Source: Setoptus koraiensis (lineage: Eukaryota; Animalia; Arthropoda). From it: a stretch of 64,000 bases of DNA. A program made the position numbers and the translations under genes. This document shows, one piece after another, positions 1 to 52,063 of this stretch (position 1 is its first letter; each line of letters starts with the position of its first letter). Below the pieces are notes generated by a model that worked only from the letters and a program-made list of their open reading frames with translations, was not told the DNA's origin and did not search any database. The DNA lies in NCBI GenBank assembly GCA_048013815.1, contig CM106585.1, positions 4,402,001 to 4,466,000 of the forward strand, read 5' to 3'.

Positions 1-630
1 GTAGAATATGAAGGCCGAATATAATAGTTCCTGGTGCTTGCTTGCCTGCGTGTGTTTCTGGTGTATTGCCTAATGTTTTGCTAAATTTAAAAAATGTCTC
101 GCAATGGTTATTGGTTCTGGTGGTTTATCTATGATTTTGTGTCTCCAATGGAGCCCGTGAGTTGTGGGGTGCAAGCGAAGCTGATGGGCGGTCGGGCGGG
201 TCGGTTGTTCAATCTAGACTGTACACAATGACATGTGTGTCTAGCAATGGTTGCTATACGAGGAGCTTCATGGTTTTTGTGGGCACCATCGCTGCTCGGA
301 TTGAGGCAATTGAATGAGTAATAGTGCAAATAAGTGAGCCAAAAATTAGTTAGCAAACAACGATTCGTTGTGCTGGTGCCGCTGCCGCTGCATCCACTGT
401 CCTTTGTATTTATCCTGGGGTTGTTGTTGTTTTTTGATAATAATTAATATTAGTGTGGTGTTTGTATCATAGGTCCGTCGGATTAAATTGAATTAGCGGC
501 CAATAATATTGCTGTGTGCCAATAGGGACCTGTGACAAGCCCATGATGATAAAATAGAATAAAATAAAATAATATTAAACGATCATATGCTGGCTGGCTG
601 TCTGGCTAGCTGGCGCACTGGTGCTAGCAG

Positions 631-633
<3 letters not shown>

Positions 634-663
<30 letters not shown>
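634..663. repeat. (CA)15 microsatellite
   Basis: Perfect dinucleotide run. Confidence 0.95.
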
Positions 664-666
<3 letters not shown>

Positions 667-1668
667 GGTCAGGCAAACAGGGAGGGTGAGGCAGGCCTAC
701 GAGCAGCTTACATAATGTGTGTGTGTGTGTTTGTATGAGTTTGAGTGCGTGCGTGTGTTTGTGCGGCTATCTCACTGGGTGCGTGCGTGTGCCTGTGTGT
801 GCGCGTTAGTGCGATGTGATGTTGATGTGAATTGGATCGGATCGGATCGTATTTTGTTGGATTTTGTTGCCGCCGCCGCCGTCAGTATTGAGACGGCGAG
901 ATGTGATGTGATGTGATGCGATGTTGCGCGATGGCCATAAATGTTGTTGTGGCGGCTGGTTGTTACATTCACTGGCAAAGTGGCTTCTCTATCGTCGATT
1001 GCACTTGGTCATTTTCAATAGCGCCAGTCAATGGTAGTTATGTGTCATCTGGTCGCCTGTCCGATCTGGTATTTCAAATCCGGTGTTGGCACACGACCAT
1101 TCATGTGAGTGTGTGTGTGTGTCGTTCACTAAAAGCTTGCACTGGCTACACCGAGTATACCGAGAATTTTGTGTGAGCCGAGTCTGGCAGTCTCGCACAC
1201 GTCACAGTGCTGCTCGCTGGCGGGTTTCTGTATCGGCGGCGACGGCGCCGATTCACACAAACGCCCAAAGTCCGACAAGAGGATTGCAGCTCGTCGTCGG
1301 AGTTACACGCCGTGCAACAACGGATAAAGCTGCTGCAAGAGTGTGCGACGAGCAGAACAACCAGCAACAACTGCTATACGCTATGCGTTGTACGCTCCTG
1401 GTTGCGAACGCTCAAACGATGTGTGTTACGTAATGCCCTGGCTTCCATCGCCTGCATGCACCATGATGATGATGATGGTAAACAAGTAATGGCGAGCGAG
1501 GGCTAGGTTGGCATCACCACGGTTGCCTGGGTGGCAGCCACCAATACCATGCCAGGCCATGTTAGCAACCACGCAGACTGGTTCATTGAGGTTGCTCCCT
1601 GTACCATGGCCGTGTCGATACCATCATCGCCGCTACCAACAGCAACACACAACCACACGACAACGAAG

Positions 1669-1670
<2 letters not shown>

Positions 1671-1706
<36 letters not shown>
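1671..1706. repeat. (AC)18 microsatellite
   Basis: Perfect dinucleotide run. Confidence 0.95.
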
Positions 1707-1708
<2 letters not shown>

Positions 1709-3725
1709 GCATGCATAAACCTGTCGTAACCTGTGCGTCTCTCTATATTTCTAGTCGTAGCGCGACTGGCGTACAAGCTAACCAGTCTTATGGAACAACG
1801 CACACATGCTCACGGTCAAACAACAACAACGAGAAAAAAAACAACATACACATTTCATTCTGGGCACACACACTCCGACGGAATCAACACCGACACAAAA
1901 CAGGTACGAACTAACGGTAACTACAACATCTGGTGCTGCATTCTACCCACGCTACCTGCATAACGCGCTTGTTAGTGCCCCAATTGTCGGTCGGCCATTT
2001 GGCCAGCTCAATTGGCTCAGTTGGCTCAAATGGCTTGCACTGTTTCGCTTTAGCGCTATTACGCTATCAGAGCTTGGCTGCTCATAATGCTCTGCGGGGT
2101 GATACGGTGCAAAGAGGGCAGCCAGTGGATTGGCCGGCCGGTTTAGTTACCAACTTTGGCTGTGATTTGGCGAGCCAATCGCCACTTAGATACCTGTGCA
2201 CCACCCGGGGCGCGGCCCGCCTGGCGCACAGTTCGCATCGGCCGGGCCGCCCGTGCGACCTGCTTGGCTGGACGCACTGTGTGTTGCATACGGTGGTGGT
2301 ACATGTAGTATGTAGTCAATTGGGTGGCTCCACTGACCACCAATATATGTGTGTTGTTAATTTATTTAGGCCTTTATTTGTCAATTAGCGAACATTCTCG
2401 CAGCGAATGACACTTGTGTGTTATTCACTGGTGCACTTGTGAGATTCAACTTACAACTTAAACTGGCGAGGAGAATCGGTGTTTGTCAATGGCTAACGTG
2501 CCATTGACAAACAGCTTGCCAATGACAACCAACATTATGCAACTTGCAATGGCCCACTCAAGATGGCGCTACTGTTGCGAGCGAGCAAACCACGTTGTGT
2601 GTGTTTATCTGGTGCAAAATTCGCTTTGTTATTGTTTACAGCGAAAACAGTGTTCGCAGATACAATGTGTGATATATGGACAGTGCGTGAACAATGTTGT
2701 TTTTCGTTGTCCATACACTGACACAGTGACATGCCGCTAGTGTCTAGGACACGAGGACTTTGGGCATTGCGTGTATTAATTAATTGATCCGAGCGACTCG
2801 CTCGAAGCGAGCCGTGCAGCCGTAGCATTTATCTGATAAATCTTGCAGCCGAGCGAGATGCTCCAACTGTTAGACTCTAACTGTTAGAGTCGAACAATTG
2901 TGAGACGGCTGAAAATTGTTGGAAATGCGCCCGGCGTGAGCGTGCACGCGGAGGAAATGATTGATTTTTGGCGATTGGTCGGCCCGTGAGCGCTGACAAA
3001 TTGCGACATGGGTGCATATCGTTGGCCAGACCGAGCCAGCAATATGCTGGCCAGCAGCACGCGGACGGGCCTAAAGTGAAGTGTCGGCCGGGCCGCATCT
3101 TGCAGACGCAGCAACATTGCCGGACAGGGCGCCAGCGGCCAGCGCATTGTCTGCATGGTGCAGACTGCACGGGGTCACTTTCACTTTCACTCTGGCTGGG
3201 CGCGCGAACGCGCGCCCGTCCGACCCATAGAACCCGTGTAACGTTCGACAAGAACGCTCCATGGGTTCGACAGAACGTTCTACGGGTTCGACAAGAACGT
3301 TCGCTGTGCTCGCTGGCTTCTACGGGTTCGCTGGCTACGTTCGCAGCAAGGTTCGTCAGTCGGCCGGCCCGAGAGGTTCGCCAGTTGGCAGGCCCGAGAG
3401 CTTGGACCGTCCAGCGCGGACGGTTCGCCAGAGGTTCGCCAACGGTTCGCCGTGGCGCGACGGCTCGCGCAAGATGGTGGCCGGAGGTAGCTGGGCCCGT
3501 GGGCTGTTGTGCGCTGGGGCGGCCGAAAGTGCGCAATGGTGGCCCCATGCGAGGCGCAGTGAGCGTAGTTTGCGGAGGACACGCCAGGGCGTCAGCGTGA
3601 TCGCAACTGCGGGCGGCTGCATCAGTCACTGATGATCAGTGGAGTAGCTGCCGCTGCCGCTGCTGAGATTGGCGGTGTGCTGCTGCTGTTGCAGTTGCAT
3701 TGGCATGCCATGGTGCACCACGGTG

Positions 3726-3769
3726 CAATGGTGAGCCAATGGTGAGCCAATGGTGAGCCAATGGTGAGC
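3726..3769. repeat. 11-bp tandem repeat CAATGGTGAGC x4
   Basis: Four exact copies. Confidence 0.9.
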
Positions 3770-4535
3770 ACCAGCCAGCAGCCAGCAGCGGCGGCAGCAG
3801 TCAACAGCGGCAGCGGCAGCAACGCTGCCAACGCTGCTCCTTTGTTGCTGCTCGCGAGTGTCGCTGCTGCTGCCGCTGCTGGGTCAGCGACGCCGTCGCG
3901 TCGTCTTGTGGCGCTGCCGATGTTGTCGTCGTCGTCGTGCCGCCGCCGCCGCCTTACGTTCTCTGGCTGTTCCATAGAATCAGATATGTGTTGTGAGTCG
4001 CAAGCAAAAACTCACGACATTTATCACAACGCAAACCATGGCTGATGAGACGCGACAAACAACCGCAACATCAGCAGCAACAGCCACAGCCAAAGACACA
4101 GCAATAACAGCGTTACTACCACCAAAAACAGCGACATCGTCAGCGACAGCACATAGAGACACCACACTGCTCATACACATATCTCTCGCATATCTATTAT
4201 CACTATTGCCACCATCGTCGCCACTATTATTACCGCCGCTACCATCGAGCCATCGGCACCCGCTCGGCCGGCCACTCGGATAATTCGAACACGCTCCCAT
4301 CGAACTCCTGCTCGCATCACGCTCGAATCGAGCCTCGGATAGCCCCGCACTCGCGCAATTCGCCAGCCGCATCGGACCCAGCGAACACACAGTCGGACCC
4401 ACACAGTCGGGATCACTCACAGTCTGCTAGAACCCAGCAAACGGTCGGATCGGATCGAACCAAACCGAACAAGGGAAATAATTTAATCTTGCACCTCATA
4501 CGAAGCAGCAGCCATTTAATTAGCCAGTCGATACC

Positions 4536-5693
4536 ATGAGCATGGCCAGCAGATCGCCCGTGCCCTCAACCTCGGGCCAGGCCCCATCACTCAATTTGGG
4601 CAACATGAGCAGCAAGGACTTCAAGAGGCTCCTAGACACACAGTCACTCGTTGATGTAACGCTCGCTTGCGACGGCGGACAAATATCGGCCCACAAGGTT
4701 GTACTATCGGCCTGTAGTAGCTACATTAACAAAATACTCGAAAGTCATCCAGTCGAACATCCAATAATCATATTACCAGAACTAAATATTAGAGATATTA
4801 GAATACTAGTAAATTACATGTATACGGGAGAATTGTTAACTATGAACGCACCCTCGCACAGTCTGCTCAAGACGGCAGCAGTTTTAAATATCAACAGTCT
4901 CAATGATTTCTTCAACGAATCATCATCTTCACCAAGTCTTACCACTTCTACTACTTCAACTACTGCTGCATCACTGCAACCCACAATAAACAACAAATCA
5001 CCAGCGACCAACAACAACAACAACAGCAACAACTATAACAACAACAACAACAACTACAACAATTTGAAAAATAGCAACAATCACACTAAACAAACTCGCA
5101 AATACAATTTCAAAAATAAACAAAATGGCATCAATAGCAACACAATCTTAGCCGCTAATCGCGATGATGCGCCAAACAGCGACATTGTTGCTGATAACAA
5201 CATCAACGTCAAATACCTCAACATCAACAATCTACAGGAATTTCTCGGTTCCAATTACACTAATCATTTGGACGACGACGATGACGACGATGATGTTGAT
5301 GACGATCTAGACGACGACGATCTGGACGATGATCGAGACGCCCTAATGGACGAAAGTTCTGATCTCCATTTAGATGATGAAATGATGATGCTGCCCCAAC
5401 ATGACACTACAATTAATAGCCAATTTGATGGCGCAACCAATGGCGCCAAAAATCAAAAGGCCTCCTCACTAAATTCTTCTAAAAATAGATTGCATCTGGA
5501 CATGCAATTCAGATGCCCCGTTTGCGAGCAAGACTTTTACACTATTTGCAGTTTTGAATACCATATGCAAAGGAATCATTTTGTTAGCTCGTTTGGTTGC
5601 GAAATTTGCGATAAACCCTTTGCAAGCCTGCGATATGTCCTAACCGATCACATGAGGCGCTGCCACGGCTGGCTGGCTGAACAAGAAGTTTGA
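4536..5693 (+). CDS. BTB/POZ (tramtrack-type) domain + two C-terminal C2H2 zinc fingers, 385 aa, apparently single exon
   Basis: LVDVTLACDGGQISAHKVVLSACSSY...HPIIIL...LVNYMYTGE matches the ttk/broad/bab BTB core. CPVC-x12-H-x4-H and CEIC-x13-H-x4-H fingers at the C-terminus. Poly-N and poly-D linker. Orthologue not assignable by eye. Confidence 0.9.
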   Translation: MSMASRSPVPSTSGQAPSLNLGNMSSKDFKRLLDTQSLVDVTLACDGGQISAHKVVLSACSSYINKILESHPVEHPIIILPELNIRDIRILVNYMYTGELLTMNAPSHSLLKTAAVLNINSLNDFFNESSSSPSLTTSTTSTTAASLQPTINNKSPATNNNNNSNNYNNNNNNYNNLKNSNNHTKQTRKYNFKNKQNGINSNTILAANRDDAPNSDIVADNNINVKYLNINNLQEFLGSNYTNHLDDDDDDDDVDDDLDDDDLDDDRDALMDESSDLHLDDEMMMLPQHDTTINSQFDGATNGAKNQKASSLNSSKNRLHLDMQFRCPVCEQDFYTICSFEYHMQRNHFVSSFGCEICDKPFASLRYVLTDHMRRCHGWLAEQEV

Positions 5694-5829
5694 AAATGTT
5701 TGAATTGATTAATCATCGTTTTGAACCCCAACCCTAAGATACTATTACTATTATTGCAACTATTATTATTATTATCATTATTATTATTAATTATTATTAT
5801 TATCAACAATACTAATTCTCCTGAAAAAA

Positions 5830-6939
5830 TCAATTGCTCCTTGTCTTTAAATCTGGATCACGTTTGTGTCGAGGCTTGATATACCACGTCTGATATCTGT
5901 TGACACGGCATTTCTCTCTGATTTCTTCGTACACTTCTGGCCAAGATACCTTCTTAGACTCTAGTTGGGCTCTTTCAATTGCCTTTCTTGCGTACTCTTT
6001 TGGATCGAACTCTTCTGCGTCACGAATCATACTCAATAGCTCAGTCCTAAATGTTTTCTCTTTGATGATCTCACGTTTAAATCTTCTCTTTGCAATGAGT
6101 GTCTTGAATTTTTTCCTGAATTTCTTTAATTTGTGCTTCTTCATCTTTTGTCTCCTTATAATCTTCAGATGAAGGCGCAGATGATTGGTTCTGAACTTGT
6201 GTCTGAAGTCCAGATATTTTTTTATGGAACCTTCAGCATGAAAACCACGTGTTACAGTAAGATTGATATTATTTGTTTTGGATGTCATCAGATTTGTAAC
6301 ATGCATATTGTTAGGCGTAGAAGTTGAAGCGCCGATGTGCCAATGACGCTTGATATTGTTTGTTCTGTTCAAGGCTTTTTTAGGTAAAGGTTTAGAGAGG
6401 TCAGTTTCGTAACAACGTCGACTTGATGTGCCTATTGCATCGAGGATAGTCATCATCTCAGTAACAGACAGTTCATACATATTGTTGAAATTGAATTGTT
6501 GTAACTTGACTGGATCGTTCCAAACCTTTGGCCATAGCTGGTGAACCATTTTGTATTGATCATATAACAATGCGTATTCCTTGCGATTATCAAGACATTC
6601 TGGATAAACGAGAGAGTCGGCATATAATTTGCCAACAAACATATCTTTGGGCAACGATCCCGATGTGTTCATCTTTTTCATCTTATCCGTTATGTCGAGA
6701 GAAAGCAATGGCTTTCCTGCGACAATGTCCGGCCTCTCAAATCCTGATATTCCCTTTTCCTGCTCCTTGATGTCATACTTGTGGTCATCGTTACTGATAT
6801 CCTGCAATTCCTTATTTTCCTCGGTGCCTTGTTTTTGATTCAAATGGGCAATACTCCTGATTGTTCTCTTGTGTTGGCTAAATAGACCGTGTCTCACGGC
6901 CGAGCCAAGACATAGGTGGTGTCCCAGACGGGTGAACAT
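5830..6939 (-). CDS. Mitochondrial protein, 369 aa: presequence + ACAD9/VLCAD-like N-terminal fragment + mitoribosomal small-subunit mS38 (AURKAIP1/COX24-like) domain
   Basis: aa 256-325 LKIIRRQKMKKHKLKKFRKK...REIIKEKTFRTELLSMIRDAEEF matches the arthropod mS38 motif (IRRRKMKKHKLKK..R..RKEK.F...L...I.DAE.F). aa 94-170 SLPKDMFVGKLYADSLVYPECL resembles the ACAD9/VLCAD start ([45 protein letters not shown]). aa 1-39 are Arg-rich with no acidic residue. The ORF is uninterrupted. Confidence 0.8.
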   Translation of the reverse strand: MFTRLGHHLCLGSAVRHGLFSQHKRTIRSIAHLNQKQGTEENKELQDISNDDHKYDIKEQEKGISGFERPDIVAGKPLLSLDITDKMKKMNTSGSLPKDMFVGKLYADSLVYPECLDNRKEYALLYDQYKMVHQLWPKVWNDPVKLQQFNFNNMYELSVTEMMTILDAIGTSSRRCYETDLSKPLPKKALNRTNNIKRHWHIGASTSTPNNMHVTNLMTSKTNNINLTVTRGFHAEGSIKKYLDFRHKFRTNHLRLHLKIIRRQKMKKHKLKKFRKKFKTLIAKRRFKREIIKEKTFRTELLSMIRDAEEFDPKEYARKAIERAQLESKKVSWPEVYEEIREKCRVNRYQTWYIKPRHKRDPDLKTRSN

Positions 6940-7621
6940 TTTGAAATAGGATAAATTATGATAAAACTGAGGAATCCATAGGTTAGAATGGGGCTCGATG
7001 GAACAATGATCCCATGAACATGTGACCCGAGAGATCTCGTTTGCACCATGTGTGTTGTGCTTGTTATGCTTGCCTGCGCACGCCCACTCATTCCGCCGTT
7101 ACCCGCCAAATGCCACACCCATTCAGTGAGTATTCCAGAATTTGAATTTGAAATCTAAAACAGGTAGCAATAATGACACAAAAGGGTTGTCGTTTCAGTC
7201 GGAATTCAAGGATGTAGTGAAGAAAAAGAAAGGTGTCGACAGAGTGAGACAAGCAAACAAATATCTCAATAAAACGAGTTGTCTGTCAATCGGCAGCGGA
7301 CCCGTCATGCAACAAGAGGCATGGCGCCACCTTCGTCGAAATGGTTCGTTGTGTTCACTGACAAAGTGAGAAAAAGTTGACAATATTGAAGGTGAATAAT
7401 ATTGAAGAACGATTCAAAAGCGGAAACCATATATAGATAAATCAGAGAATGCCTCAACCAGGCAGTCTTAGACGGAACTAGAAACTGAATATTTGCACTG
7501 AATACCGTGTAAAAAGCATAATCGAAATAAAATCTTCGGAAGTGATTGCAGTGCTTCCGGCCATTCAGCACCATTTATCTGAGCCCTTTACTCATGAGCC
7601 TTTCACAAACTAATTTTTCAA

Positions 7622-7627
7622 TTTATT
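7622..7627 (-). terminator. Putative polyadenylation signal (AATAAA) of the SIFaR gene
   Basis: TTTATT on + strand, about 40 nt downstream of the SIFaR TAA stop (7666-7668), in AT-rich context. Confidence 0.5.
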
Positions 7628-7665
7628 CAATTAATTAATAATAATCATTATTTATACAGTTGTTG

Positions 7666-10345
7666 TTATTGTAATATCTGACTTGTGGTAATAGGCTGAA
7701 GTTTTGTATTAGATAATATTTGTTCATGATAGGCGATTATTGACTGGTTTTGGTTTGCAATAATGGAAGAGGAGCCATTTGAGTTATGATTAGAGCACGA
7801 TGACGATGACGAAGAATTTGATACGGACTGTGATTGGTGTCCCGAACGATCGGATAAACTGTCTATTTGTTGTGCTCTGCTATTGTTGAATTGTCTAGTC
7901 AACGTTTCACTAGTTTGTCTATTTGAAAGTTGCTCACTCCTTAGATCACTTCCAATTGCTGATTGTTTTAATCTATTGTTTGCATCACATTCATTGTTAT
8001 GACTAGTATTATTATCATTATCTACTATGATATTGACATTGTCTCCATAGTCAATGCCATTAACAAAGTGACCATGATTATTCGGTTGTCTCATTGTTCT
8101 ATTAGTTATTATTTGATAATTGTTCGACGACATTAGGCTATCGTCATCGTCATCACTTAATTTATGATTATTATATTGACTGTTACCAGTATTGTGTTTG
8201 GAAATATTTACACTATGAGAGTATTTTGGCTGCTGCTTCAGTTGTTGTTTGATGATTGTTTTTATATTTGATTCGCTTTGATTGAAATCGCTCTGTGATA
8301 TTTTGATTAATGAACAATTATTGCTAATATTATTACTGTTGTTGTAATTGCGATTATTATTAAAATCGTATTCATAATCACAATCATTATTACTATTGTT
8401 GTTGTCACTGCTGTTGTCCGACATGAGACGATGATTACTATTAGATGCTTGATATTGACGATTTTGCTCATTGGCTGCAGTAGTGTATGATTCTTGTGAT
8501 GATTGCCGGGGCGAAATGGATCGTACTGTCAATATTTCACCTGATGAACTGAAGCTATCCTCGTTACTACCGGTATATTTACATCCACTGCAATCATGTT
8601 TGTTGTTGTTCCTCGATTGCTTTCGCTCCGCTGCTGCTGACGTTTTAATAATATTATTCAAGTTATCCTGTCTCTTACAATCTCCATCTAGAATCATCGA
8701 GTGGTTTATGTGCTCGTCCGAAGGTGTCTCCACTGACGAATGAATACCCGATGATGAGCCCTGATTTGTTTTGAGCGATATACTAGTGGCAACCGAGGAA
8801 CTGTCCGAGGGCTGCCTGCCAATTGCTATATTATGATGACGAGATTGCTCCGGTGACTCAGTCTCATATATAGCGGTTATGTTATTAACAGGTTCTGAAT
8901 TATTTGTTGCACTTAATACCTTGCTGGTATGCCTCATCGACGACAGGTCGTCGACAAAATTGTTCACTGTTGCGGTGTTTGCTAGCGAATTGCATCTAGC
9001 TCTCGATTTGTTGGCCTCCTTTATTCTTTTGCCATCAACCTTCCAATGATCATCTTGTTGTTGCTGTTGTTGTTGTTGTTGTGTATAATTTAGAACACTT
9101 TCGTCAAAAACAATTGCATCACCATTGCTAGTGTTTATCACTGTCGCATCATCATATTCTGTTATTAACGGTACCCATGTCTTTCTCCTCTGCGTATGTC
9201 CCGATGAAAGATCCATTTTATCGCATTTCAATCCTTTCATTTTATAGTCTGTCATGGGTATATCGACTATTCCGTTCATCGGATTGCTGTTGTTGTTGCT
9301 AGCGTTGTTGTGGCTACCTCTTATGACATATCTGAATGTTTTGTCATCATTACAATCAGTATTCCTCCTACACCGTTCAATTCCTGACCCAGATGGCCTA
9401 TTGGCCTCATTGTTTGACCGCAATGATTGTGTAATGAGTGCATGGTGACCAGTGTTTCCAAACTGTTGTTGCTCGATAATTGTATCATTATACCGATGAC
9501 CGCTCGACGATTCGCAGTCGTAGACATGGATATCCGAGTTATTACTCATTGTCTCTTTGTCTAAGTCTCTGAGATTGTCTGACTTGTTATTATTTTCATC
9601 TGACGCAAATACAATTGTACCAGATGGCGCGTTCATCAAGGAATGTATCTCACAAATTGATGGTGAGTTGCTCTTGCTACCATTTGATGTTGTTGTTGTT
9701 TTCATCAAAATTGTGGTTGTTGTTGATGGTGCATTCTCAACAGTAATTGGTATTGTTTGATGATTAAGATTAATTTTATCAGAATTATACAAATTGGTAT
9801 TTTTGGTCATTTGATGATTCATTCCGTGCAATATAGTGAAATTGTCACTTAGATTGTGATGGTTATGTTTTGTTTTTTGATAATAATTGTAACTGTCCCG
9901 ACCCGAGCCATTATGGTGTATTACTCCATTTATACCCACTACAATGGAATGATTTGTTTGATTGGTATATTTTGAGCTCAGTGGGAATTGTAGACAACAG
10001 GATCTAACTGGGCTGTCATCATTATGTAAATCAAATCTTTGTTTGGTGTCACCATTTGATATCTTGTGCCGTTGCAGGGACTGAGCGTTGTGATTGTTTG
10101 AATAGTTATTGTGAGTATGATCGTGATTGTGGCCATTCCCTGCACCATTTGGGTGCTCTTGTGTCAGTCCGTCAAGTCCGTTCTCTGTACCATAGTTTTT
10201 ACTTAATGTCGTTGTGTTAGTCCGATTTGAGCGCGATCTGCCCCAACATTTGCTTGCCTTTAGCATCTCTGCAAAGCCCTTACGATACTTCCTATTGAAG
10301 AATGTGTACAATATTGGATTGATGCAACTATTCGAAGCGCCCAGC
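7666..10345 (-). CDS. SIFaR: SIFamide receptor exon 4 (TM7, helix 8, ~860-aa C-terminal tail, stop)
   Basis: Acceptor ttgctttttctctatctcgcttAG. Phase-2 join TG|G gives [26 protein letters not shown], matching SIFaR/NPFF-receptor TM7 ([16 protein letters not shown]). Open to TAA at 7666-7668. Confidence 0.93.
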
Positions 10346-13300
10346 CTAAGCGAGATAGAGAAAAAGCAAGATGTTGATAGGAACAGGGAGCAGATAAACA
10401 AGAAAACATTGATTAATAATTGGTAGAAAGTTTGTGTGCAATTAATTCATTTCGACCTTTGCGCCATCAGGCTGCATGGGGTAGATTTGTGTTTGAATAA
10501 ACAAGTTTTTCCAATAAACTTGCCGGCCTGCAAACGTGCCGGCAAGCCGAGCATGTCCCAGCACTCAGGTGAGCCAGAAAGAAACAAACAAACAATCAGA
10601 CAATCAAGCAAGCAAACAAACGAACAAACAAACTAACTCCTCTCCAGAGTGTTTATCTGAATTCTGTTTGATGATGAAAAAGCGCTTAGGTTTTTGCGAG
10701 ACACACTTTATATCTGGTGCACTTGTGCACTTGATCTTGACAAACGATAAAAGCGCCCCTCGGGGAGGGGCCAAAAGAACACGATTAGACAAACAGTCCA
10801 ATAAGCTAATCTTTGCTTATACAACAGCAACTAGCTCACTTTGTCCCTCCGCCAACCACTCCCCGGCGCCGAGCACTAATAAAGCACTTGTGATAACTTG
10901 GTATCTTTTGCCCGAGAAACACGCTGTCTTGTGTGTTTGCGGGACGTGTCTCGGGCCGGCATGTTGCGCATCTGATACTCGCAGATAATAAAATCCCGAG
11001 CCCCATCGCCAGAGTAGCCAAGAGGCTGCCAATGGAAATTAAGTTGCCGTCCCGAGCCATGCTCATACTAAATAATACTATATTATATAATCCATCTTGT
11101 GTTGCATTATTCCATATAATATTATGGTGTCACTGCGAGACGTTGTGCCCGCTGGCTAGATCGTTGATCAAGTTGGTCGCGATAAGTGGGCGACTTTTGC
11201 ACGAGCTGCCTCAGTGGACTCGTGCTTTCATTTGCATCGGGGGATATGCGCGCTCATTATGTCATTTTGTTACTGCCACCTGAGGTTGTAAGAGCGCGCT
11301 AAAAAACAGCCGCTCCAACTACTCAACTACAGCATAGATTCCATAGCATTTGCTTGGACGAACCACGACAACGATCTCATAACTCCGCGCCACTCTCAAT
11401 GAGATTCTCGTCATGCCGCTAATTAGCGACCGATCGGCATGCTCAATTAACCAACTAATCAGTCAAACTAGTTTCTCTCAGTCTATTGTGGCATGCCGGT
11501 CGACTGGCGGTGAACCAGTCACCCAATAGCACATGGCGCCACTCGAAGTGCTTCGGGACCGCCATTGTTATTATTGCATGGCCATCATTATGAGCCCGTG
11601 CTTGTTTGGGCCCCAAATTTGGGCCCCAAACTGATTGCAGCCAGGTGCAGTTGGAGCGATAACAAAAACTGCTTGCTATTTTTGCTCAATCCATCTCGGA
11701 CGCACCCTCTACTAGAGAGTATCTAGTCTCTCCATAGCTGCAAGGAGTAGAGCTCGCTCTGGCTTTCTGAGCTGCCCCCGTAAGGGCCCCGTGGCTCGAA
11801 ATCGGCAGTTTACACCGGGCCACTGACAACATTGTGAGAGCACCCCAACTCGGATAGAATTTTCAAAGTTTCTCAAAGTTTGCCGAGTTCGCGAGCCCAG
11901 CTCGCTAAGGTATGGCGATTTGCTGGACCAGTTTGTGGGGCCCCAAACGCGGGTTATTTTGTGGGCCCCAAACGTGGGCCAATGATAAAAGGGCGACGAG
12001 CGAAACACTTATGATGAGCAACCCACCAAAACCAGCAATCAGAGGTCGGTACCTGGGGCCAATTTTAAGCCGTGACTGCAGCGATTCTCAGAGAGAGAGA
12101 GAGAGAGCTCTGTTGGTCGTGCGAGTTTGTTGGGCCGCAGACAAACAAACATTGACTTTTCCATTGAAGTCAGGGGTGTTCCGAAAGATCTATATCGGGC
12201 CTATCTTTATGGCAACTTTGTCAATAGGCAAGCTCGGCCCGACTAGCTAATGAGCCAGCCAGTCGCCACTGTGTGACATGCTCATTAACTGGATCTGGCT
12301 AACGGATATTCATTATGGATCATTAGATACCGGGGAGTGTTGCGTTTGTTTGCAATGGTTACACCATTCAACTGATATCATCAAGTGGAGTGCGGATGAT
12401 TAGGGCCCGCAACAAAAGTCATGTTGTTTCCTCTTAGACGGCTCCACTTTGAGACGATCGCCGTAATTGAATTGGCCACCGCTGATACACACCTATGAGT
12501 CATAGGCTATGACCCGCATAGGCGGCTCGCGAGGGTCCGCTCAGGGGGCCCCGAAAGGCTCTCAGGCCAAAAATCGGCTCAGCCGTAAGCGCTGGTCTCG
12601 CCGGCCGAGATTATCTGGTGTGTATGAGAGGTATTTTTTCCGTGCATTAGCTTGCCGTCGCGATGGGCCCCCAAGAGCTGGCCGGCAAATTAGCCGATGG
12701 TCTTCGGTATTGGGTTGTACTGGCTATTTTTGCAAATGTCGTTCGTTGCTCTCAATGACAATAATGCTCAATGTCAAAGTACAAAGTCCGCTGTCCGTCT
12801 TAAAAGCCCGCCCCCCTCTAATCCGCACTCCGGCGGGCCCAGCTCGCCCTGAGTGACTTGTCGGGCGGCCCAGCAGGGCAGCACTGATTTAGAGAGAATT
12901 AGAGAGGAGAAAAAATCTATCTAATGATGATGAGTTATAGCGGTTTGCGCTGCGAGAGTGGCGGCACGGTGTCTCGAAATCGCCAAGCAGCGCGTTGTCA
13001 ATGAACTCTCGGTGTCGGTCGGCTTCGAAGCCGTCCAGTCGGGCCGGCTTCGAAACGGCGCACTCTTTGTCGGTTGGCAAGTTAATTCCGACAAAATACG
13101 ACCACTATCTATCGGTAACAAAGCGCGTTTCGTTGGTTGCGGGGCATAGATGGATAGATACTATCTATTGGATAGGCGCACCAGAGATAGCTGCACCGAT
13201 TACAGTTGCCGGCGCGCCAGTGTAATTATCGCCAGACACCTCGCCCGGAGCATTAGGGATGTTGTGAGCGTTTTATTATGCACAAACAGCGCGGCTCCTG

Positions 13301-40793: not shown

Positions 40794-41052
40794 CACTAAA
40801 TTATTCGGGCCCCCAAAACTGGCAAAATCAGAGTGCCTGTAGCTGGTCTAATGGAAGCCATAAGAGTGGGGGCCAATTTGCGCGCGCGTTTTCATTCATG
40901 CAACAACTTGCCGCGAACGGGCCGCTACACATATTTGTTTTTGTATTTGTCGCCGAGTATTTTGATTATATTTGCGGGACGCTCGGTATGAATCGAGTGC
41001 GGATAATTGTGATAATTGCGCCATGTCGGCGTGTGTGTGTGTGTGTACTTAC

Positions 41053-41502
41053 GGACAAATAGGTTGCTGATGAGAGTTGCTGGCAAACAAAACAGTAAGA
41101 CGAGAATGTCGGCCAAAGCGAGATTGGCTATGAAATAGTTTGTCACTGTTCGCATTCGGGGCGATCTGTACACTATGGCCACGACAAATCCGTTACCTAT
41201 TATGCCGATAATGAACACAATTGTATAGGCGAGCGCCAACAAAGTGCTCACGCTCAGCGAATGTCTCAGCCAGGGGATATCGGTGTGCACAACGGAGGCC
41301 GCCGATGTGACAACTGAATTATCTTCGTTTTTGCGCTGCTGCTGTTGCTGTTGCGTAACCGCCGCCGCTTCCACAATGGCCGTTGACAGGTTGCTGTTGG
41401 TTGTTGGCTGCTGTTGCTGTTGCATTGTTGTCACTGCTGTCGTTGATTGAATTTCCGCCCTGTCGCTGCTAATTGACGCTAATGACACCGCCTCCAGTTG
41501 TG

Positions 41503-41536
<34 letters not shown>

Positions 41537-42007
41537 TTGTTGCTGCTGTTGTTGTTGATTGTCGAGCGATGCTGGCGTACCTGTGACGACCGCCATGCTG
41601 TCGCTAGAAATGGCCGATTGCGTGGCGACGATAGTGATTGATTGCAAGTTAGTAGTGCTACTGCTATTGTCTTGGCTGTCCAATGGCGGCTGCGAATTAA
41701 CTGCCAACAACAATGCAATTGGATTACTGTTGTTGCTATTGTTGCTGTTGATCACTAGTCCGCTTGACAGCAACACCAACACCAAGTGCCAATACAATGG
41801 GCCCCATCGCAAACATAATGAGCCTCGTGCCAACACTGTTCTTGTCACCTGTTTTTTCGAGTATGGCTTCACTGGGACACGCAAAAAACAGCGCACCGAT
41901 GATCTCATGGGCGAGCACACAATCCGCTGCAAGCTGGTGGCATTGTCGCTGGCGCTGGCCTTGTCGCTGGCGTGCCAACAACAAACCGATTTCTTTTGGG
42001 TAGCCAT
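41053..42007 (-). CDS. SIFaR: SIFamide receptor exon 1 (long N-terminus, TM1, TM2)
   Basis: [60 protein letters not shown] is class A peptide GPCR TM1-2 of SIFaR type. Donor C|GTAAGT. Four exons sum to 4,254 nt = 1,417 aa + stop. The exact start ATG is uncertain (M1 versus M34). Confidence 0.9.
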
Positions 42008-51151: not shown

Positions 51152-52063
51152 CTAATTACAGGTGTGCAGTTGTTTTTCTGTTTTGCAAATAAAACAGGTT
51201 GTATGGCAACAATAATGAAATTTACAATGACACATTTCGCTATGACTAATAACGCGCGTTTTGTAACCACGTCCGCAGCACAATTTGTCACAGGAATCGG
51301 GCGCGTTAGGATGAGCGTTTGGGTCGCATTCTCTCGCTTGGGTGCCCGCGATGCCGAGCCTGGCATCCGGCTGACAATAATCGGGCGACTTGTGCAAATG
51401 TATCAGGTCCTCTTTGTTGAGGTACTGGAAATTTTGTTGCTGGTAGTTGTAGTTGTTGTTGCTGTTGCTGTTGTGAGCGGCCGAGCTGGCGTGCGACCTC
51501 TTGCCGTAACTGGCGCTGCTCTTGCCGTTGTGATAATGGTGACTTCTCGCCGTGGGCCCCATAGAGGACACAATTTGCGTGGTGCAATTGTGCCCGTCGA
51601 TCAGTATGAGCGTGGTGTTTGAATTTATAATTAAATTATGTTCCGTGGTGGCGTTATTTGTAGCTGGCGGCAAATCGCCGCCACTTGCAACAACATTGGG
51701 CTCGTCGTTGACAAAATGGTTGTCCATGTGATTCAGTTTGTTGCTGTTGACGGCGGCCACCACCGTCTGATTGCTCGCTGCGCTCTGCTGTTGGTTGTTG
51801 CTGGCCACTTCCGGTTGCTGGTGCTGCTGTTGTTGTCGTTGGTGCTGGTGGCGCGTAAGAACGTTGATAATCTCGCCCTTGTCCATCATGGCTATGAGGC
51901 GATGCGCCTGTATGGACGGAATGTGAATAGAGGAGTCGTATTTGCGCTTCAGATAATCGCCCACCACGGAGAACGTGGGCAGCGTTCGCCAACAGGTTGT
52001 GAGGGCGCAAGAACCGGACACGCCGTGACAGCGGCACTTGAGCTCCATGTTGCGAGCCACAGC
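51152..52063 (-). CDS. Wnt16: Wnt ligand terminal exon, Wnt16-like
   Basis: AG|GCT GTG GCT gives AVARNMELKCRCHGVSGSCALTTCW (lipidation motif CHGxSGSC intact). KYDSSIHI resembles Wnt16 KYENSIQI; KSPDYCQPDARLGIAGTQAREC resembles Wnt16 [22 protein letters not shown]. Full C-terminal Cys pattern CCGRGY...CHCKFHYCC..C..C......C. Wnt family certain, subfamily probable. Confidence 0.85.
   Translation of the reverse strand, partial: AVARNMELKCRCHGVSGSCALTTCWRTLPTFSVVGDYLKRKYDSSIHIPSIQAHRLIAMMDKGEIINVLTRHQHQRQQQQHQQPEVASNNQQQSAASNQTVVAAVNSNKLNHMDNHFVNDEPNVVASGGDLPPATNNATTEHNLIINSNTTLILIDGHNCTTQIVSSMGPTARSHHYHNGKSSASYGKRSHASSAAHNSNSNNNYNYQQQNFQYLNKEDLIHLHKSPDYCQPDARLGIAGTQARECDPNAHPNAPDSCDKLCCGRGYKTRVISHSEMCHCKFHYCCHTTCFICKTEKQLHTCN

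What the first reader, a model, noticed from the sequence alone, without database searches (positions are those of the whole stretch)
5830..6939. Chimeric ORF: acyl-CoA dehydrogenase (ACAD9/VLCAD)-like fragment fused in frame to mitoribosomal mS38
Seen: one uninterrupted 369-aa ORF with no evident splice donor between modules. aa 94-170 (nt 6430-6660) resemble the first ~80 residues of mature ACAD9/VLCAD/Egm; aa 256-325 (nt 5965-6174) are a clear mS38/AURKAIP1/COX24 domain. The FAD-binding and C-terminal ACAD domains are not seen anywhere in the window. Established: ACAD9 is a complex I assembly factor (MCIA complex with ECSIT and NDUFAF1); mS38 is a small-subunit mitoribosomal protein. I know of no described fusion of the two. 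Inference: a lineage-specific chimera (mS38 captured an ACAD9 promoter and presequence) or a bifunctional precursor linking mitochondrial translation to complex I assembly.
Basis: partly seen in the sequence, partly recalled or inferred. Interest (0 to 1): 0.85.

Follow-up and report, generated by a model that had tools for sequence, protein, structure and literature searches.

The report
Egm/ACAD9 leader fused to mitoribosomal mS38
A mite gene joins, in one unbroken reading frame, the start of a complex I assembly factor (Egm/ACAD9) to the mitochondrial ribosomal protein mS38; the fusion is real in the DNA and found in no other sampled species, but whether it is made as one protein could not be tested.

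Summary
Window 5830-6939 (minus strand) is one 369-codon ORF.

- **N-terminal part (aa 1 to about 190):** homologous from the start codon onward to the N-terminus of the acariform-mite Egm/ACAD9 family. The best hit is a 706-aa protein at E 7.6e-28. A family profile built without the window gives E 2e-40.
- **What that part corresponds to:** a structure model of the best hit aligns with human ACAD9 and VLCAD from their first mature residue.
- **What is missing:** nothing else of the ACAD protein is found in the 64 kb.
- **C-terminal part (aa 229-369):** a conserved mS38 core, 88% identical to its nearest relative, with dN/dS 0.03.
- **Linker (aa 181-232):** free of acidic residues and ends in an R-x-F motif conserved across mS38 homologues.
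- **Other species:** none of 26 mS38 homologues or 8 mS38 loci carries the Egm block.
- **Assembly check:** sequence words across the junction occur in six read sets.

Best reading (0.55): a lineage-specific chimeric mS38 precursor that uses a borrowed Egm targeting leader, which is cut off after import.

Transcription, the real start codon and processing are untested, because my single read-mapping call returned no reads. First-reader notes list many similar N-terminus captures in this genome; none has been checked.

The parts
5830..6939 (-). Whole chimeric ORF: 369 codons plus a TGA stop at 5830-5832. The first ATG is at 6939 in a CAAAATG context.
6823..6939 (-). aa 1-39: N-terminal targeting-type leader. 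It has 6 K/R, 5 H and no D/E, and the highest helical hydrophobic moment of the ORF. It aligns with the N-termini of mite Egm proteins.
6661..6822 (-). aa 40-93: acidic, variable linker. It has a counterpart in mite Egm proteins and is predicted to be disordered.
6400..6660 (-). aa 94-180: Egm/ACAD9-derived block, equal to the first ~85 residues of the mature ACAD N-terminal alpha-domain. Predicted helices are 96-101, 119-139, 143-148, 151-156 and 159-180. It keeps all 4 invariant and 4 near-invariant family columns.
6244..6399 (-). aa 181-232: spacer free of acidic residues and presequence-like (8 K/R, 3 H, 12 S/T, 0 D/E). It contains the fusion breakpoint, somewhere between aa ~190 and 229. 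There is no AG dinucleotide between 6350 and 6240, so no splice acceptor lies directly before the core.
6241..6249 (-). R231-G232-F233: R-x-F motif at the start of the conserved core. R is invariant and F is present in at least 90% of homologues. It has the form of an MPP R-2 / Icp55 processing site (inference).
5833..6255 (-). aa 229-369: mS38 (AURKAIP1/COX24) conserved core. It is 87.6% identical to the nearest relative (L006), with dN/dS 0.03. The K/R-rich COX24_C-like stretch is aa 259-282 (nt 6094-6165).
5740..5814 (.). (ATT)n-type microsatellite just downstream of the stop codon. No transposon or target-site-duplication signature flanks the gene.

Best explanation
This is a real, lineage-specific chimeric nuclear gene of an acariform mite. 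The complete 5' coding end of an Egm/ACAD9 gene is joined in frame to the conserved mS38 core. That 5' end comprises the start codon, the mitochondrial targeting leader, an acidic linker and the first ~85 residues of the mature N-terminal alpha-domain. The join is a ~50-residue spacer with no acidic residues.

Inferred mechanism. The protein is translated from M1 and imported through the borrowed Egm leader. It is then cut at the conserved R231-x-F233 site. This releases a ~137-aa mature mS38, which enters the small mitoribosomal subunit. The Egm piece acts as a long, dispensable propeptide and cannot act as a dehydrogenase.

Shown: the ORF, the origin of both modules, the absence of the rest of ACAD from the window, strong purifying selection on the core, and the absence of the fusion from all sampled relatives.

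Inferred: transcription as one unit, initiation at M1, import, and internal cleavage.
For: - ORF continuity.
- Egm homology from the start codon to aa ~190. A profile built without the window gives E 2.2e-40.
- The block keeps every invariant family column. It is sister to P0017 with a similar end branch, 0.69 against 0.52. It is therefore not an old decaying relic.
- mS38 core. dN/dS is 0.03 against L006.
- The R-x-F-H-A motif is conserved. Homologues carry N-terminal parts of 54-177 aa (median ~95) that are variable and mostly poor in acidic residues, as long cleavable leaders are.
- Mature bovine/human AURKAIP1 runs at ~16 kDa against a calculated 22.4 kDa (PMC3726836). The N-part of yeast mS38 is divergent and unresolved in the ribosome structure (PMC6582356).
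- Junction words are present at 0.94-1.00 in the Logan contigs of six runs from five studies.
- If M1 is on the mRNA, its CAAAATG context and the stop-free frame make the fusion the default product.
Against: - There is no transcript, cDNA or peptide evidence. The only read-mapping call returned zero reads, so it was no test.
- The exact protein, and any near-identical protein, is absent from the 15-billion-protein collection.
- A start at M162/M163 would give 208 aa, the usual family length.
- The nearest relative (L006) has an intron acceptor and a stop 23 codons before the core, and no Egm block within its 346 upstream bases. The fused arrangement is therefore not shown to be shared or old.
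- The intact Egm part could simply reflect a very recent duplication.
- No cleavage predictor was available.
Confidence: 0.55

Rival explanations
1. The Egm part is an untranslated or non-functional relic. A recent partial duplication of the Egm 5' end landed upstream of mS38. The working mRNA starts inside the ORF, and mS38 is translated from M162/M163 (208 aa) or from M212/M218.
For: - M162 gives the family-typical length.
- aa 181-232 look like a presequence in their own right.
- There are no expression data.
- ORF integrity proves nothing if the duplication is young.
Against: - 161 upstream codons are intact and in frame, with all family-invariant residues kept and no excess branch length to speak of.
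- M162/M163 lie inside the Egm-derived TEMM motif, so this product would still be chimeric.
- M212/M218 leave only 13-19 residues before R231, against at least 54 in homologues.
- The hypothesis needs an internal promoter, for which there is no evidence.
Confidence: 0.2
2. This is a shared-first-exon locus, like grass sdh2-rps14. The Egm block is exon 1 of a full Egm gene whose other exons lie beyond the start of the window. Splicing would give Egm, and read-through would give the mS38 precursor, so both proteins would use one promoter and one targeting leader.
For: - A documented precedent exists for a mitoribosomal protein (PMC1543663).
- In tetranychid-type Egm genes, ORF fragments stop shortly after the IG.S motif, which is about where the window's homology ends.
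- Gene density in the window is low, so long introns are possible.
Against: - No ACAD remainder is found anywhere in the 64 kb, including the 5.8 kb downstream.
- That downstream stretch holds an opposite-strand BTB-zinc-finger gene and GC-rich non-coding DNA.
- No convincing GT donor follows aa ~180-195.
- The sister gene P0017 is intronless.
Confidence: 0.12
3. The protein is a tandem bifunctional precursor. Both halves would be functional after cleavage, with the Egm fragment acting in complex I assembly or regulating the MCIA complex.
For: - Family-invariant residues are retained and the block has confidently predicted helices (pLDDT above 90 for aa 120-170).
- The spacer looks like a second presequence (first-reader note s1-318773).
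Against: - The fragment covers only about five helices of an alpha-domain that normally packs against the missing domains.
- Folded alone, it matches no solved structure.
- No relative shows such a free-standing fragment.
Confidence: 0.08
4. The join is an assembly artefact that connects two unrelated loci.
For: Chimeric ORFs can arise from misjoins, and X25/X26 may be the source sample of the assembly.
Against: - Words across 6150-6480 are held at 0.94-1.00 by six runs with three organism labels from five studies.
- No repeat lies at the junction.
- An in-frame, stop-free join is unlikely by accident.
Confidence: 0.03

Closest known systems
Grass nuclear sdh2-rps14 (rice, maize, wheat): a mitoribosomal protein expressed behind the first exon of a respiratory-chain gene (PMC1543663, citing Figueroa 1999 and Kubo 1999)
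   Same: A mitochondrial ribosomal protein is made as a chimeric precursor. Its N-terminus, including the targeting peptide, comes from an unrelated mitochondrial OXPHOS-related protein.
   Different: In grasses, rps14 sits in the sdh2 intron and the chimera arises by alternative splicing, with full sdh2 still made from the same locus. Here the join is a continuous ORF and no further Egm exons are in the window. The grass case followed an organelle-to-nucleus transfer. Here mS38 was already a nuclear gene, and the organism is an animal.
Canonical mS38 / AURKAIP1 / Cox24 (PF08213)
   Same: The C-terminal K/R-rich core is conserved. The N-terminal part is variable, and in mammals it is apparently removed (22.4 kDa calculated against ~16 kDa mature, PMC3726836). 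The N-part is divergent and unresolved in yeast (PMC6582356).
   Different: The N-terminal part here is 230 aa, against 54-177 in 20 measurable mite homologues. It is recognisably derived from another gene.
Mite Egm/ACAD9 (P0017; D. pteronyssinus 'complex I assembly factor Egm-like' P0042; Sarcoptes ACAD9 P0036; Tetranychus P0020)
   Same: The leader, the acidic linker and the first five helices of the N-terminal domain are homologous.
   Different: The window lacks the rest of the alpha-domain, the beta-domain, the C-terminal alpha-domain and the ACAD9/ACADV C-terminal domain.
Tandem mitochondrial precursors cut internally by the processing peptidase (yeast Arg5,6; recalled from my own knowledge, not checked here)
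   Same: One imported polypeptide with an internal presequence-like stretch and an R-2-type site.
   Different: Those precursors yield two complete enzymes. Here the upstream part is only a fragment of a domain.

Membership tests
mS38 / AURKAIP1 / COX24 (PF08213) | C-terminal K/R-rich COX24_C domain | tested here: met
   The window alone scores E 0.048, below the Pfam cut-off. It is 57-88% identical to a family in which 12 of 17 members hit PF08213 (best E 6.9e-5). The Atlas nearest clusters are 'mS38 C-terminal domain' proteins (score 0.92, 189 shared features). A family profile against PDB gave nothing, probably because of the strongly basic composition.
mS38 / AURKAIP1 / COX24 (PF08213) | Purifying selection on the core, as expected of a working ribosomal protein | tested here: met
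   dN/dS is 0.03 against L006 over 137 codons; dS is saturated.
mS38 / AURKAIP1 / COX24 (PF08213) | Residence in the small mitoribosomal subunit along rRNA h44 | not testable with these tools
   Known for yeast and mammals (PMC6582356, PMC3726836); inferred here.
ACAD9 / VLCAD / Egm | Sequence descent from the family | tested here: met
   aa 1-190 match the N-termini of mite Egm/ACAD9 proteins at E 7.6e-28 and E 2.2e-40 with a profile. The P0017 model aligns to ACAD9 and VLCAD from their first mature residue.
ACAD9 / VLCAD / Egm | Complete three-domain ACAD fold plus the ACAD9/ACADV C-terminal domain (PF21343) | tested here: not met
   Only HMM positions 18-186 of the family are present in the 64 kb. 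The window protein has no Acyl-CoA_dh or PF21343 hit.
ACAD9 / VLCAD / Egm | FAD and substrate binding, or MCIA partner binding | not testable with these tools
   The regions that carry these functions are absent, so enzyme function is excluded by anatomy. Partner binding by the fragment is unknown.
Chimeric mitochondrial precursors with a borrowed targeting leader (sdh2-rps14 type) | N-terminal leader homologous to that of another mitochondrial protein gene | tested here: met
   Homology to Egm starts at the initiator Met and covers the leader.
Chimeric mitochondrial precursors with a borrowed targeting leader (sdh2-rps14 type) | The donor gene's remaining exons are at the same locus and reached by alternative splicing | tested here: not met
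   None in the window. DNA beyond the start of the window could not be read.
Chimeric mitochondrial precursors with a borrowed targeting leader (sdh2-rps14 type) | Internal processing that frees the mature ribosomal protein | tested here: inconclusive
   A conserved R-x-F motif preceded by 50 residues without acidic residues fits an R-2/Icp55-type site. No predictor or experiment was available.
Chimeric mitochondrial precursors with a borrowed targeting leader (sdh2-rps14 type) | Expression of the chimeric mRNA | tested here: inconclusive
   Four RNA runs labelled with a co-occurring organism gave zero reads on 5000-8000, which is no test.

The most novel reading that the evidence does not exclude
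This gene may be one instance of a genome-wide process in this mite. In that process, the 5' ends of genes (promoter, start codon, targeting leader) would be repeatedly copied onto other genes, especially genes for mitochondrial proteins. First-reader notes on the same genome list more than a dozen such cases, including POLG-OPA3, LRPPRC-STOML2, ZnT9 and SCO1 with an mRpL22 leader, CISD3-SCOT, NDUFAF4-NDUFB11, NDUFS8-citrate synthase, IleRS-MRPL14 and COQ3-MRRF. The one case checked here proved accurate. If the pattern holds, the lineage would show wholesale re-equipping of mitochondrial precursors by leader capture, and here it would place mS38 supply under Egm regulatory control.
Probability: 0.2. 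Interest if true: 0.75.

Novelty: new variant of a known kind. Interest (0 to 1): 0.5.

Why it matters
Chimeric genes that borrow a targeting leader are well documented in plants, after organelle-to-nucleus gene transfer. They are rarely described for animal genes that were already nuclear.

A natural mS38 precursor with a 230-residue foreign N-terminal part would show how tolerant mitochondrial import and processing are of long, partly folded propeptides. It would also give a dated example of exon or leader capture between two OXPHOS-biogenesis genes.

If a full-length Egm is missing from this genome, the locus would also mark the loss of a complex I assembly factor.

If the many similar notes on this genome hold, the larger question is what mechanism copies 5' gene ends so often in this lineage.

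Tried and rejected
- **Direct recognition of the ACAD block.** Pfam, PDB phmmer and a profile search, and Foldseek on a model of aa 1-200 all gave nothing. The link needed the exhaustive search plus a structure model of a full-length relative.
- **mS38 against solved structures.** The mS38 family profile against PDB gave no hit.
- **Read mapping.** Read laying on four RNA runs of 'organism A' gave zero reads. That label is probably a co-occurring or host species.
- **Exact-protein look-up.** The 369-aa protein is not on record.
- **Synteny.** The Egm contig (L002) and the mS38 contigs (L004, L005) share nothing with the window apart from the two modules.
- **Metagenome scan.** It returned only distant mS38 loci without an Egm block.
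- **P0032.** This hit shares LWPKVWN with the window but lies on a microbial-looking contig. I rejected it as chance.
- **Extent of the Egm-derived part.** Similarity of aa 194-223 to P0017 217-241 is marginal: p about 0.04 locally, and not significant against the rest of the protein.
- **Repeats and RNA families.** Searches around the gene found only a microsatellite.
- **Taxonomy.** A search with the Wnt exon gave no close named species.
- **Literature.** No paper describes an ACAD9-mS38 fusion.

Full report
**1. The observation**

Window 5830-6939 on the minus strand is a single ORF of 369 codons.

The flanks are as follows.
- An opposite-strand BTB/C2H2 gene lies at 4536-5693.
- An (ATT)n microsatellite lies at 5740-5814.
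- About 725 bp of non-coding DNA lie upstream.
- Beyond that, the stop codon of a long low-complexity ORF is at 7666.

**2. The C-terminal module**

Sixteen proteins of 208-312 aa share only aa ~229-369 with the ORF (E 1e-46 to 1e-30). Their N-terminal parts cannot be aligned.

By itself the window protein gives only a weak COX24_C hit (E 0.048). However, 12 of 17 family members hit PF08213 (best E 6.9e-5). The nearest ESM Atlas clusters are arthropod 'ribosomal protein mS38 C-terminal domain' proteins (score 0.92). A family profile found nothing in PDB.

A second search with the C-terminal part alone found a closer relative, P0058, on two 650-nt metagenome contigs, L006 and L007. It is 87.6% identical over 137 aa. 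Nonsynonymous changes are rare against saturated synonymous change (dN 0.07, dS about 2.3, ratio 0.03). The core is therefore a working gene under strong constraint.

**3. The N-terminal module**

Pfam, PDB sequence searches and a fold search of a model of aa 1-200 do not recognise it.

The exhaustive search of aa 60-200 against 1.84 billion representatives gave 19 hits.
- The best hit is P0017: 706 aa, E 7.6e-28, 46% identity.
- The long hits carry the ACAD9/ACADV C-terminal domain, with weak Acyl-CoA_dh domains.
- Cluster members are named by NCBI as D. pteronyssinus 'complex I assembly factor Egm, mitochondrial-like', Sarcoptes 'acyl-CoA dehydrogenase family member 9', and an uncharacterised Tetranychus protein.
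- The Dermatophagoides protein matches human ACAD9 at E 1.6e-14 and VLCAD at E 2e-4.

An AlphaFold model of P0017 (pTM 0.77) aligns to VLCAD (Z 31, model 101..699) and to ACAD9 8phe_A (Z 29.7, model 104..699 to chain 38..613). P0017 aa ~101-190 are therefore the first ~85 residues of the mature enzyme. BLASTP puts window aa 94-178 on P0017 103-187.

Homology actually begins at the start codon and includes the leader and the acidic linker.

**4. What is missing**

tblastn with all 19 hits finds only the first ~190 residues of Egm in the 64 kb. A profile of 15 full-length family members, searched against the six-frame translation, also matches only that part (HMM positions 18-186, E 2.2e-40; every other hit has E > 0.2). 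Positions 1-4500 look non-coding and are GC-rich.

**5. State of the Egm block**

It keeps all four invariant and four near-invariant columns of the family alignment. In a tree of the block it is sister to P0017 (SH-aLRT 99), with end branches of 0.69 and 0.52.

An old, untranslated relic would be expected to show stops, frameshifts and lost invariant residues. The block is therefore either constrained or young. The data cannot tell which, because no close relative of the block exists in the collections.

**6. The junction**

aa 181-232 contain no acidic residue, 8 K/R, 3 H and 12 S/T, with a high helical hydrophobic moment at aa 183-200. The stretch ends in R231-G-F233.

R231 is invariant and F233 is present in at least 90% of homologues, as R-x-F-H-A. 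This has the form of a processing-peptidase R-2 site followed by removal of one residue by Icp55. That reading is inference from established knowledge, not a test.

Homologues have N-terminal parts of 54-177 aa before this R. These parts are mostly poor in acidic residues, as long cleavable leaders are. Published data agree: mammalian AURKAIP1 is 22.4 kDa by calculation but ~16 kDa when mature (PMC3726836), and the N-part of yeast mS38 is divergent and unresolved (PMC6582356).

**7. Gene structure**

- No AG dinucleotide lies between 6350 and 6240, so no acceptor precedes the core, and no good donor follows the Egm block.
- In L006, by contrast, the frame hits a stop 23 codons before the core, just after a good acceptor. 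None of its 346 upstream bases encodes anything Egm-like.
- The relative therefore has an intron where the window has continuous coding sequence. Its first exon is unknown.
- Short ORF fragments of tetranychid-type Egm genes end shortly after the IG.S motif. This suggests an exon boundary near the point where the window's homology ends. P0017, however, is intronless.

**8. Is the join real?**

Sampled 31-letter words across 6150-6480 are held at 0.94-1.00 by the Logan contigs of six runs under three organism labels from five studies. No repeat lies at the junction. Misassembly is unlikely.

**9. Distribution**

None of 26 mS38 homologues scores above 3.3 bits with the Egm-N profile. None of the mS38 loci (L001, L004-L010, with up to several kb upstream) holds an Egm-like exon. 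None of the Egm hits carries the mS38 motif. No synteny links the relatives' contigs to the window. No paper describes such a fusion.

**10. Expression**

Expression is untested. The four RNA runs offered under the label 'organism A' gave zero reads on 5000-8000, and the tool itself calls that no test. The exact protein and any near-identical one are absent from the protein collection.

**11. Interpretation**

The simplest reading is a chimeric mS38 precursor that took its start codon and targeting leader, and probably its promoter, from Egm. The Egm-derived part would be removed at the conserved R-x-F site. I put this at 0.55.

The rivals are:
- a young relic with an internal start (0.20);
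- a shared-first-exon locus like grass sdh2-rps14 (PMC1543663) (0.12);
- a truly bifunctional tandem precursor (0.08);
- an assembly artefact (0.03).

**12. Context**

First-reader notes on the same genome list many other genes said to carry a copied N-terminus or presequence. They are unchecked and were not used as evidence. Since the one examined here proved accurate, a genome-wide test seems worthwhile.

Noticed in passing
same genome, other windows (notes s1-318714, s1-330763, s1-330784, s1-330798, s1-330813, s1-318754, s1-325845, s1-325846, s1-318719, s1-325852, s1-322706, s1-330760): More than a dozen first-reader notes claim that other genes in this genome, mostly for mitochondrial proteins, carry an N-terminus, presequence or promoter copied from another gene. 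This could be a genome-wide pattern of 5'-end capture. None has been checked.
   Followed up: no
L009:4653-5504 (283-aa ORF; shorter form is P0001) and P0013: Two divergent mite mS38 homologues share an acid-rich N-terminal motif (K-V/I-D/E-LPDFDKMR ... DEREL-F/Y-N) ahead of the core. Pfam and the Atlas do not identify it (Atlas score 0.79, unnamed clusters). It may be another recruited N-terminal module.
   Followed up: partly
L006:1-346 and L007: The nearest mS38 relative has a clear 3' splice acceptor (..tctattctcag) and an in-frame stop 23 codons before the conserved core. An intron therefore sits where the window has continuous coding sequence.
   Followed up: partly
P0017, P0020, P0036, P0042 (mite Egm/ACAD9 family): The Pfam Acyl-CoA_dh middle-domain hits fall below the curated cut-off (21.6-23.1 against 33.3 bits) and the C-terminal-domain hits are marginal, at or near it (20.4-26.1 against 22.4 bits). 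No N-domain hit is found. Even so, the predicted fold matches ACADs at Z about 30. The family looks like a strongly diverged, possibly non-enzymatic ACAD9.
   Followed up: partly
window 51155-52060 (-), 40928-42007 (-), 4536-5693 (+), 7666-10401 (-): Other coding pieces in the window: the last exon of a Wnt gene (PF00110, E 1e-48), a piece of a rhodopsin-type GPCR, a BTB plus C2H2 zinc-finger gene with long poly-N/poly-D tracts, and a 911-aa low-complexity ORF with no Pfam hit.
   Followed up: partly
window 2900-4600: A GC-rich stretch (50-57%, against about 35-40% around it) with overlapping ORFs on both strands, upstream of the BTB gene. It looks like non-coding promoter or leader DNA.
   Followed up: no
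runs X8, X11, X12, X13 ('organism A'): Four large poly-A RNA runs gave zero reads on 3 kb of the window, although DNA-type runs with the same label hold 39-94% of its words. The label probably belongs to a host or co-sampled organism rather than the mite.
   Followed up: no
L012:6001-6726 (P0032): A 241-aa internally duplicated ORF shares the heptapeptide LWPKVWN with the window (E 3e-5). It lies between GMP synthase, MoaA-like and MetE genes on a microbial-looking contig. I take it to be a chance match.
   Followed up: yes
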